Counted from the first letter of the stretch, positions 41,399 through 41,919 are shown. The stretch: DNA of 64,000 bases from Octopus sinensis (GCF_006345805.1 NC_043007.1:56730001-56794000), one strand, 5' to 3'. A program made the numbers and translations. Notes: a model not told the origin generated them from the sequence alone.

Positions 41399-41400
<2 letters not shown>

Positions 41401-41919
41401 GCCCCGATGCAGTACCAGACAGTGGCTCTCATGGCTTCTGATCTTAACTGATTGGAAGTGTTATCATGTACATTATTTTGTCTTGGTATAAAAGATGGGC
41501 TACAGCAAATATTCTGCTCAATACCACAGATTTGCTTGTCAGTTGGTTGACCTTAACCAGTTGAGCATGTCCCTTAGTGGCTGACGTTATGTGCATCTCT
41601 GATCATGAGTAGAAGTAGTGGGGGGAGCATCATAGCTGTGTGTTGAAAGGAATTCTTAGAGGTTTGGATAATTCACCTTTTGAAACATGGGTGATTCGTT
41701 CAACATCGTTGAACAATCCTTATTTTGGGCGGGATGGCTCGAAAATTCTAACTGCAATTCTAACTGTTTATCTTGATATGAGATCACTATGTCATGCACA
41801 TATGGTTGTGATGCATGTGCCTGGTGTACCCTTATCAGACGGGTAGTCATGGTGGGTATACTGTGTTTCGTATATTTTATCCCAGTGTCACTTTGATGGC
41901 ATGTACTGCTCTCTCATTC
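41399..41919 (+). mobile_element. ~520-bp non-coding interspersed element inserted in (AAT)n
   Basis: Starts ATGCCCCGATGCAGTACCAG and ends CTGCTCTCTCATTC. Reverse-complement copies with the same two ends at 52364-52766 and 53386-53940. Confidence 0.85.

What the first reader, a model, noticed from the sequence alone, without database searches (positions are those of the whole stretch)
41399..41919. Fixed-end, non-coding ~520-555 bp element that always sits in (AAT)n in one orientation: candidate non-autonomous partner of Dong-type retrotransposons
Three copies (41399+, 52364-, 53386-) share exact 5' (ATGCCC.GATGCAGTACC) and 3' (CTCTCA.TC) ends. Each has (AAT)n on its sense strand on both sides, the same polarity as every R4/Dong copy here. 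I see no TIRs, Pol III boxes, poly(A) or credible ORF. It lies upstream of a Dong copy at 41.9 kb but downstream of one at 54.0 kb, so it is not simply that element's 5' UTR. Inference: it is mobilised in trans by a microsatellite-specific RLE endonuclease/RT, like the short internally deleted elements of R2. Its 3' end does not visibly match the three Dong 3' UTRs in this window, so the partner is unidentified.
Basis: partly seen in the sequence, partly recalled or inferred. Interest (0 to 1): 0.75.

Follow-up and report, generated by a model that had tools for sequence, protein, structure and literature searches.

The report
Short repeat living inside octopus (TAA)n microsatellites
A non-coding repeat of about 400-555 bp in an octopus genome always sits inside AAT/TAA microsatellites in one orientation, next to Dong-type jumping genes, and is probably a hitch-hiker copied by their enzyme, but its partner and even its transcribed strand are not yet shown.

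Summary
Three full-length copies (41399-41919 +, 53386-53940 -, 52364-52766 -) share exact ends, carry no ORF, TIRs, Pol III boxes, poly(A) or Rfam match, and are embedded in (AAT)n in one polarity. That is the polarity of all five Dong-type (R2-superfamily, RLE) fragments in the window.

New points:
- There are two subfamilies with conserved ends and a swapped middle.
- A fourth, end-less core fragment lies at 51203-51425.
- The host is an Octopus.
- The repeat's "sense" strand was assumed, not shown.

The Dong-partner reading is plausible but unproven (about 0.45). Both junctions are exact in every copy. The 3' junction has the Dong phase (N|AAT). The abundant tRNA-SINEs here, which carry (ATT)n tails in the opposite polarity, have ragged 5' junctions.

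Against it:
- No similarity to any Dong UTR in the window.
- Base composition opposite to Dong's.
- No ribozyme found, though that test failed on a control too.
- The context of the fourth fragment.

The main rival (about 0.25) is an (ATT)n-tailed retroposon read on the other strand. A genome-wide census of truncated copies would decide. I found no description of a Dong-dependent non-autonomous element. Interest is moderate.

The parts
41399..41919 (+). Copy c1 of the repeat (subfamily A, 521 bp), full length
41399..41626 (+). 5' module shared by both subfamilies (positions 1-228; the core fragment c4 shares about 106-247)
   Evidence: 92-95% identity between copies
41434..41459 (+). 10-bp hairpin (positions 36-61, three G.U pairs), identical in all three copies so no covariation
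   Evidence: MFE folds
41487..41494 (+). TATAAAAG motif present in all three copies (shifted 13 nt in c3); function unknown
41627..41831 (+). Middle module specific to subfamily A. It is bracketed by a 17-nt inverted repeat (41627-41643 / 41798-41814) that pairs better as RNA of this strand (G.U pairs)
41832..41919 (+). 3' module shared by both subfamilies (last 88 nt, ends CTCTCAYTC)
   Evidence: 86-91% identity
53386..53940 (-). Copy c2 (subfamily A, 555 bp; 10- and 24-nt insertions relative to c1)
52364..52766 (-). Copy c3 (subfamily B, 403 bp; middle replaced by an about 85-nt module with (GAT)n)
51203..51425 (-). Fragment c4: core only (about positions 106-315 of subfamily B). Both ends are missing. 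It lies 448 nt from the (AAT)68 array, with no array on the other side
41334..41398 (+). (TAA)n array 5' of c1: 16 units, a 1-nt phase slip, then 5 units, then unique DNA
41920..41990 (+). (AAT)24 between c1 and the 5'-truncated Dong copy, in phase throughout
41991..43804 (+). Dong-type element, 5'-truncated (RT C-terminal half, CCHC finger, RLE, about 195-nt 3' UTR), with in-frame stops
43805..43908 (+). (AAT)35 3' of that Dong copy
53941..54016 (-). (AAT)25 between the 3' end of a Dong copy and c2; 1-nt phase slip 12 units from c2
54017..54481 (-). Dong-type element, last about 121 codons plus about 100-nt 3' UTR
53350..53385 (-). (AAT)12 3' of c2. On the + strand this is the (ATT)12 tail of the tRNA-SINE at 53136-53349
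52767..52842 (-). (AAT)n 5' of c3 (22 pure units, then TGA variants), bounded by the head of a second tRNA-SINE
52085..52351 (-). Dong-type fragment (about residues 790-883 of a 960-aa relative), truncated at both ends. It lies 4 AAT units after c3 and is flush with (AAT)68 on its 3' side
51874..52077 (-). (AAT)68 array between the Dong fragment and the unit that contains c4

Best explanation
The repeat is a non-autonomous, non-coding retroposon specialised for (TAA)n.(TTA)n microsatellites. It is copied in trans by the reverse transcriptase/restriction-like endonuclease of the Dong-type (R4/R2-superfamily) LINEs that occupy the same arrays.

**Proposed cycle (inferred, not shown).**
1. An RNA is made by read-through from flanking DNA. 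It runs from repeat units upstream of ATGCCC... to (AAU)n downstream of ...CUCUCAYUC.
2. The Dong protein nicks the TTA strand of another array.
3. The freed 3' end pairs with the (AAU)n tail and primes cDNA synthesis through the short element to its 5' end. Hence there is no 5' truncation.
4. [quoted passage not shown]

Because the body of the repeat is unlike Dong in sequence and composition, it is not a plain internal-deletion derivative. Recognition would rest on the microsatellite tail and/or an unrecognised structure in the conserved 228-nt 5' and 88-nt 3' modules.

**Shown:** anatomy, location, polarity, exact junctions, conserved ends with a swapped middle.
**Inferred:** an RNA intermediate, the strand, the partner.
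For: - Three of three full copies, plus the 5' side of a fourth copy in an O. bimaculoides gene model, lie within (AAT)n in one polarity. That is the polarity of all five Dong fragments.
- The Dong-type family is (TAA)n-specific in this polarity in another animal too. Dong is the described (TAA)n-targeting LINE (PMC3812793).
- Dong-R4 elements are numerous and recently active in Octopus vulgaris: 5 families, 1129 recent insertions (PMC13282606).
- Both junctions are exact in every copy. The 3' junction is N|AAT, as in the two unambiguous Dong 3' junctions here.
- The (ATT)n-tailed tRNA-SINEs of the opposite polarity have 5' junctions with variable spacers of 0-25 nt.
- Ends are conserved (86-95%) while the middle is exchanged between subfamilies. 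This is the pattern expected when only the ends are needed in cis.
- All repeat copies are full length, while all Dong copies are 5'-truncated.
- No ORF, TIR, Pol III box or Rfam family offers another means of movement.
- Precedent: R2 SIDEs, and R2 cDNA pairing with upstream target sequence at the 5' junction (PMC3414825, PMC3774820).
Against: - No similarity of either end to the Dong 3' UTRs in the window. No shared 3' fold.
- No full-length octopus Dong was available, so the 5' end could not be compared.
- The assumed sense strand is T/G-rich (AT skew -0.10 to -0.18). Dong sense strands, UTRs included, are A-rich (+0.2 to +0.5).
- No HDV-like ribozyme was found, although B. mori Dong has an active one (PMC3774820). 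The detectors were not validated.
- The conserved end modules show no significant folding signal on either strand.
- The arrays on the assumed 5' side are similar in length (22, 25, 26 units). Two carry the same kind of 1-nt phase slip, as tails copied with the element would.
- Fragment c4 lies 448 nt from a long array with no array on the other side. That fits a 5'-truncated element of the opposite polarity.
- Only 3.5 copies were available.
Confidence: 0.45

Rival explanations
1. Opposite polarity. The true sense strand is the reverse complement (5'-GAGTGAGAG...GGGGCAT-3' followed by an (ATT)n tail). The repeat would then be one more member of the guild of (ATT)n-tailed non-autonomous retroposons in this genome. 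These are moved by the LINE, perhaps RTE-like, that moves the tRNA-SINEs and prefers ATT runs as targets. Dong elements would share the arrays only because those tails create their targets.
For: - Two unrelated tRNA-SINE families here end in (ATT)n on their sense strand. Almost all copies have (ATT)2-5, sometimes 25-79 units, just upstream.
- RTE-type LINEs carry microsatellite tails, including (ATT)n (PMC2887409). An active octopus LINE has a 3' UTR made mostly of microsatellite (PMC9115989).
- On this reading the "tails" are 22, 25 and 26 units, and two share a 1-nt slip.
- The upstream runs (24, 12, 4 units) look like targets.
- The strand is A-rich, as retroposon sense strands often are.
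- Fragment c4 lies upstream of (ATT)68 in this orientation. That array is flush with a 3'-truncated Dong fragment, as if an (ATT)n-tailed element had inserted into it.
Against: - The would-be 5' junction is exact and in one phase (ATT|GAGTGAG) in 3 of 3 copies. SINE 5' junctions here carry variable spacers in about two thirds of copies.
- No Pol III head, tRNA, 5S or snRNA similarity on this strand. It contains T4 runs.
- No significant similarity of its 3' end to the SINE 3' ends.
- No APE-type LINE is seen in the window.
- The other half of the Dong fragment that the c4-bearing unit would have split was not found.
Confidence: 0.25
2. No reverse transcription. The unit spreads between (AAT)n arrays by homology-driven DNA events, such as ectopic gene conversion or unequal or inverted-repeat recombination. 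The flanking microsatellite serves as the homology. This automatically preserves polarity, both exact ends and full length.
For: - All four copies lie within 12.5 kb of a 64-kb window. Other long arrays (9.8 kb, 34.5-37.3 kb) have none.
- A 1.3-kb array-bounded unit at 34.5-37.3 kb has duplicated locally at 97% identity.
- c1 and c2 share a phase slip in the flanking array.
- No mobility feature is found in the repeat.
Against: - Copies differ by 5-14% and fall into two subfamilies with different middles. Their outer flanks are unrelated.
- At least two further copies sit in other loci of O. bimaculoides gene models.
- Conserved ends with a variable middle are not expected from passive conversion.
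Confidence: 0.1
3. A true SIDE. The repeat is the fused 5' and 3' UTRs of an octopus Dong family that is not represented in this window. This is a special case of the best explanation, with a stringent, UTR-specific partner.
For: - It fits the R2 precedent (PMC3414825).
- Five active Dong-R4 families exist in O. vulgaris, and only about three families are sampled here.
- Dong 3' UTRs differ completely between families.
Against: - Composition is opposite to every Dong UTR examined, including a full 5' UTR from another species.
- No residual coding similarity to Dong proteins by profile search.
- The core is shared with fragment c4, which sits in a non-Dong context.
Confidence: 0.1

Closest known systems
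SIDEs (short internally deleted elements) of R2 and R2/R1 in Drosophila (Eickbush and Eickbush 2012, PMC3414825)
   Same: Short and non-coding. Found only at the target site of a site-specific RLE-type LINE, in that LINE's orientation, with fixed ends. Presumed to borrow the partner's protein.
   Different: SIDEs are recognisably the parent's 5' ribozyme joined to the parent's 3' UTR. This repeat matches neither end of any Dong seen and has the opposite base composition. No ribozyme was detected. The target is a dispersed microsatellite rather than rDNA.
Dong (Bombyx mori) and Dong-like R4-clade LINEs, including DongBg of a snail (PMC3812793, PMC3774820)
   Same: Same target, (TAA)n. Same polarity as assumed, and the same 3' junction phase. 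The two are physically interleaved in the same arrays.
   Different: Dong is an autonomous element of 3.5-5 kb with RT, CCHC finger and RLE. It is A-rich and usually 5'-truncated. B. mori Dong has a proven HDV-like ribozyme at its 5' end. The repeat is 0.4-0.55 kb, has no ORF, and is always full length here.
Octopus tRNA-derived SINEs with (ATT)n tails (copies in this window, e.g. 53136-53349 and 52850-53125)
   Same: Non-autonomous, a few hundred bp, attached to the same trinucleotide repeat, often beside ATT runs on both sides.
RTE-associated microsatellite families of Lepidoptera (PMC2887409)
   Same: Repeated sequence families that flank simple-sequence repeats because a LINE or its derivative carries the repeat as a tail.
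   Different: Those are recognisable 3' ends of RTE elements with coding similarity, and usually have the repeat on one side only.

Membership tests
R2-type SIDE (non-autonomous internal-deletion derivative of an RLE LINE) | Inserted at the partner's specific target, in the partner's orientation | tested here: met
   3 of 3 copies in (AAT)n with the polarity of 5 of 5 Dong fragments. Caveat: the repeat's own strand is assumed.
R2-type SIDE (non-autonomous internal-deletion derivative of an RLE LINE) | 5' end is the partner's self-cleaving HDV-like ribozyme | tested here: inconclusive
   No Rfam ribozyme at E<=10 and no conserved double-pseudoknot by my descriptor. The same tests were also negative on a genuine Dong-like 5' end, so the test has no proven power.
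R2-type SIDE (non-autonomous internal-deletion derivative of an RLE LINE) | 3' end identical or similar to the partner's 3' UTR | tested here: not met
   No similarity to the 3' UTRs of the Dong families in the window, and no common fold. Other octopus Dong families could not be examined.
R2-type SIDE (non-autonomous internal-deletion derivative of an RLE LINE) | No protein-coding capacity | tested here: met
   Longest ORF is 68 aa and is not conserved between copies. No Dong-profile match in six frames.
Dong / R4-clade LINE (for the neighbouring elements) | Single ORF with RT followed by a CCHC finger and a PD-(D/E)XK restriction-like endonuclease | tested here: met
   Translation of 41995-43608 shows YMDD, C..C..H..C and RPDI...D...K motifs. 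Pfam gives RVT_1 and zf-RVT, both below Pfam's curated score cut-offs. The closest solved structures are R2 proteins, E about 1e-30.
Dong / R4-clade LINE (for the neighbouring elements) | Insertion in (TAA)n in a fixed orientation | tested here: met
   Five fragments here, and a full-length 56%-identical relative elsewhere.
Dong / R4-clade LINE (for the neighbouring elements) | Phylogenetic placement with Dong/R4 rather than R2, NeSL or HERO | not tested
SINE (Pol III-transcribed, LINE-dependent) | Head derived from tRNA, 5S, 7SL or snRNA, with an internal Pol III promoter and no internal T4+ terminator | tested here: not met
   No A/B boxes with 2 or fewer mismatches in a coherent arrangement. 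T4 runs on both strands. No Rfam match on either strand.
SINE (Pol III-transcribed, LINE-dependent) | 3' end shared with a partner LINE | not testable with these tools
   No octopus LINE library or genome could be reached.
MITE of PIF/Harbinger type (TAA/TTA target duplication) | Terminal inverted repeats | tested here: not met
   No terminal inverted repeat, only internal ones.

The most novel reading that the evidence does not exclude
An RLE-type, site-specific LINE (Dong) supports a parasite that shares none of its sequence. The repeat would be copied only because its RNA begins and ends in the target microsatellite. Tail-to-nick pairing would start reverse transcription, and repeat-to-repeat pairing would finish the 5' junction. 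No ribozyme and no partner UTR would be needed. That would show relaxed template choice in the R2 superfamily in vivo. It would also reveal a three-layer ecology in octopus genomes: SINE tails make the arrays, Dong colonises them, and this repeat rides on Dong.
Probability: 0.2. Interest if true: 0.6.

Novelty: new variant of a known kind. Interest (0 to 1): 0.4.

Why it matters
Non-autonomous partners of site-specific, restriction-like-endonuclease LINEs are known only as rare R2 and R2/R1 SIDEs in Drosophila. I found no description of one for the R4/Dong clade or for a microsatellite target in the literature I could search.

If the Dong link holds, it bears on what R2-superfamily enzymes need in a template. 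These enzymes are now being explored as gene-insertion tools. It would also help explain why Dong-R4 elements and (AAT)n arrays are so prominent in octopus genomes.

If the opposite polarity holds, the repeat is an ordinary tailed retroposon. The point of interest then shifts to two retroelement guilds using the same microsatellite on opposite strands.

Tried and rejected
1. **More copies.** A search of 5.8 billion proteins with a concatenate of eight peptides from both strands found only two O. bimaculoides gene models. Neither has a contig on record. Exact-pattern scans of metagenome and prokaryote genome collections gave nothing or 20-nt chance hits in GC-rich contigs. Full-text search for four sequence strings found nothing. 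A 400-kb sample of the O. vulgaris transcriptome held as a supplement has no copy.
2. **Octopus Dong with UTRs.** The best protein hits are 58% identical and none is from octopus.
3. **Ribozymes.** Nothing by Rfam at gathering score or at E<=10, and nothing by a hand-written HDV-like descriptor. Helices conserved in all copies (1-6 with GGGUAU near the 3' end; 8-13 with UGCAUC at about 194) do not assemble into a double pseudoknot. The same tests were negative on a real Dong-like 5' end.
4. **Coding remnant.** BLASTX showed a 9/19 match of the subfamily-B middle to the RLE catalytic stretch. The profile score is negative, so I rejected it. Weak antisense hits are not colinear. The apparent Dong similarity in P0001 is not supported by the profile.
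5. **tRNA or SINE origin.** A shared TGGTTAAGG 9-mer and a 17/22 match to a SINE core are at chance level. ARAGORN at lax settings gives only noise.
6. **RNA folding to assign the strand.** The whole element has z = -1.1 and -2.7 on the assumed sense strand against about 0 on the antisense. The conserved end modules are not significant on either strand.
7. **GGTAGTG motif.** It is shared by several Dong 3' regions and is close to GGTAGTC in the repeat. In one Dong it lies in coding sequence, so I dropped it.
8. **Other LINEs in the window.** None by Pfam on the long ORFs.

Full report
**1. What is there**

The window is AT-rich (36% G+C) and packed with microsatellites and tRNA-derived SINEs. 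Peptides translated from the repeat hit only two Octopus bimaculoides gene models among 5.8 billion proteins. The source is therefore an Octopus genome.

BLASTN and a profile search with 41399-41919 find two more end-to-end copies: 53940-53386 and 52766-52364, both on the minus strand. The 5' motif ATGCCCYGATGCAGTACC and the 3' motif ending CTCTCAYTC each occur exactly three times, against zero expected.

The alignment shows two subfamilies.
- c1 and c2 are 521 and 555 bp, 91% identical over aligned positions apart from two insertions in c2.
- c3 is 403 bp. It shares the first about 228 nt (92-95% identity) and the last 88 nt (86-91%), but has a different, shorter middle containing (GAT)n.
- The partial copy c4 has only the core (about positions 106-315 of the c3 type) and neither end.

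Conserved ends with an exchangeable middle is the usual signature of a non-autonomous element whose ends act in cis.

**2. Flanks and neighbours**

- Arrays on the first side: 22, 25 and 26 units.
- Arrays on the second side: 24, 12 and 4 units.

A further copy swallowed by gene model P0001 shows the same first junction followed by about 8 units.

The window holds five fragments of one kind of LINE. They lie at 41995-43608 (+), 54476-54120, 52341-52136, 37039-36120 and 35711-34791 (all -). Their translation shows the RT YMDD box, a C..C..H..C finger and an RPDI...D...K nuclease motif. Pfam finds RVT_1 and zf-RVT, both below Pfam's curated score cut-offs. The nearest solved structures are R2 proteins.

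All five are flanked by (AAT)n on their coding strand and all are 5'-truncated. A full-length relative, 56% identical and from another animal, lies in (AAT)n in the same way, followed by a second truncated copy. Calling these Dong-type is therefore justified by architecture and target. Phylogenetic placement was not tested.

**3.

- No ORF longer than 68 aa, and none conserved between copies.
- No terminal inverted repeats.
- No coherent A/B boxes, and T4 runs on both strands.
- No poly(A).
- No Rfam family at gathering score or at E<=10.
- No similarity to the Dong 3' UTRs present, and no shared fold.

**4.

Nothing in the repeat defines a sense strand. "Same polarity as Dong" therefore means only that the repeat has a fixed orientation relative to the array.

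This matters because the abundant tRNA-SINEs here carry (ATT)n tails on their own sense strand, the opposite polarity. Examples are 53136-53349 with its (ATT)12 tail, and 52850-53125. Nearly all have short ATT runs, sometimes long arrays, just upstream. Read on the other strand, the repeat would look like another member of that guild.

Evidence for the opposite-strand reading:
- The arrays on that side are alike in length.
- Two of them carry the same kind of 1-nt phase slip, at 16 and 12 units from the element.
- That strand is A-rich, whereas the assumed sense strand is T/G-rich. The assumed strand is unlike Dong, UTRs included.
- Fragment c4 lies 448 nt from an (AAT)68 array with nothing comparable on its other side. 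That array is flush with a Dong fragment that has lost its 3' end. This is what insertion of an (ATT)n-tailed element on the plus strand would give. The other half of that Dong fragment was not found, however.

- The CTCTCAYTC|AAT junction is exact and in one phase in all copies. It is the phase of the two unambiguous Dong 3' junctions.
- If this were instead a 5' junction of a tailed retroposon, it should look like the SINE 5' junctions. About two thirds of those carry variable spacers of 6-25 nt.
- The repeat has no Pol III head on either strand.
- Two of three copies have long arrays on both sides, as Dong copies do. None of about 16 SINE copies has a TRF-detectable array on both sides.

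Weighing these, I put the Dong reading at about 0.45 and the opposite-polarity reading at about 0.25.

**5. Ribozyme question**

B. mori Dong has an HDV-like ribozyme that cleaves exactly at the (TAA)n|Dong junction (PMC3774820). R2 SIDEs keep the parent's ribozyme (PMC3414825). I found none in the repeat by Rfam or by a descriptor search. The 5'-end helices conserved in all copies do not build a double pseudoknot.

The same tests were also negative on the 5' end of the genuine Dong-like element L001. The negative therefore has no proven power.

A ribozyme may not be needed. R2 elements that cleave upstream in the 28S gene use the carried target sequence to pair the cDNA with the target. An RNA that starts within the upstream (UAA)n would get an exact 5' junction in the same way. 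This is an inference.

**6. Other tests**

- Folding energies favour the assumed sense strand for the whole element (z = -1.1 and -2.7, against about 0). This rests on a 17-bp G.U-containing helix that brackets the subfamily-A middle. The conserved end modules are not significant on either strand.
- A possible coding remnant in the subfamily-B middle, and possible tRNA-like pieces, are at chance level.
- A DNA-level rival cannot be excluded: spread between arrays by gene conversion, using the microsatellite as homology. It is suggested by the clustering of all copies within 12.5 kb and by a local 97% duplication of an array-bounded unit at 34.5-37.3 kb. It does not explain the subfamily structure, the 5-14% divergence, the unrelated outer flanks, or the copies at other loci.

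**7. Comparison with what is known**

The closest analogue by mode of life is the R2 SIDE. The repeat meets the target-site and non-coding criteria. It fails the "3' end of the partner" criterion for the Dong families in view. The ribozyme criterion is inconclusive. It should not be filed as a SIDE.

It is not a canonical SINE, MITE or Helitron. Octopus repeat papers report active Dong-R4 families but no non-autonomous partner. The held literature on Dong, R4 and microsatellite-specific LINEs mentions none. Repbase and Dfam could not be consulted, so it may already be catalogued as an unclassified repeat.

**8. Verdict**

The finding is a moderately interesting candidate, and its status can be settled by a simple genome-wide census of truncated copies and a comparison with octopus LINE consensus ends.

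Noticed in passing
window 53136-53385 (+), 52850-53134 (+), 9739-10024 (+), and copies listed: Two families of tRNA-derived SINEs carry (ATT)n tails on their sense strand, the opposite polarity to Dong. Nearly every copy has (ATT)2-5 plus a variable spacer just upstream of its head. SINE tails seem to supply the arrays that Dong and the repeat then occupy, so two retroelement guilds use the same microsatellite on opposite strands.
   Followed up: partly
window 34531-35941 and 35855-37284: A 1.3-1.4-kb unit made of a Dong 3' part plus its (TTA)n array is duplicated in tandem at 97% identity. This Dong copy also carries a 216-bp insertion with a 15-mer tandem repeat (35154-35227) relative to its relative at 54.0-54.5 kb.
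   Followed up: partly
window 52085-52351 (-) and 51874-52077: A Dong fragment covering only about residues 790-883 is truncated at its 3' end and sits flush against an (AAT)68 array. Plain target-primed reverse transcription does not produce this. Its missing 3' part was not found within 8 kb.
   Followed up: partly
window 51426-51873 (-): An unexplained 448-nt sequence lies between (AAT)68 and the core fragment c4. It has no second copy in the window, no Pfam match and no ORF. It may be the end of a second family that shares the core of the repeat.
   Followed up: partly
window 41815-42561 (+): A 248-aa ORF starts in the last 105 nt of copy c1. It reads the (AAT)24 array as poly-Asn and continues in frame into the truncated Dong RT. 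This is probably chance (one in three), but two of three copies are followed by a 5'-truncated Dong after a short in-phase array. Template jumping from Dong RNA to this RNA would give that arrangement.
   Followed up: no
proteins P0001 and P0002 (UniRef A0A0L8HEN8 and A0A0L8H821, Octopus bimaculoides): Two annotated 'uncharacterized proteins' are partly translations of the antisense strand of this repeat and of (ATT)n read as poly-Ile. They are likely spurious gene models.
   Followed up: partly
PMC9115989: The octopus LINE named RTE-2_OV is described with an N-terminal C2H2 finger, an RT, a C-terminal endonuclease, and a 3' UTR made mostly of microsatellite. That layout is typical of R2/Dong-type elements rather than RTE, so its classification may deserve a second look.
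   Followed up: no
window 41487-41494, 53845-53852 (-), 52657-52664 (-): A TATAAAAG motif is kept in all three copies. In c3 the original site is mutated and an identical motif appears 13 nt downstream.
   Followed up: no
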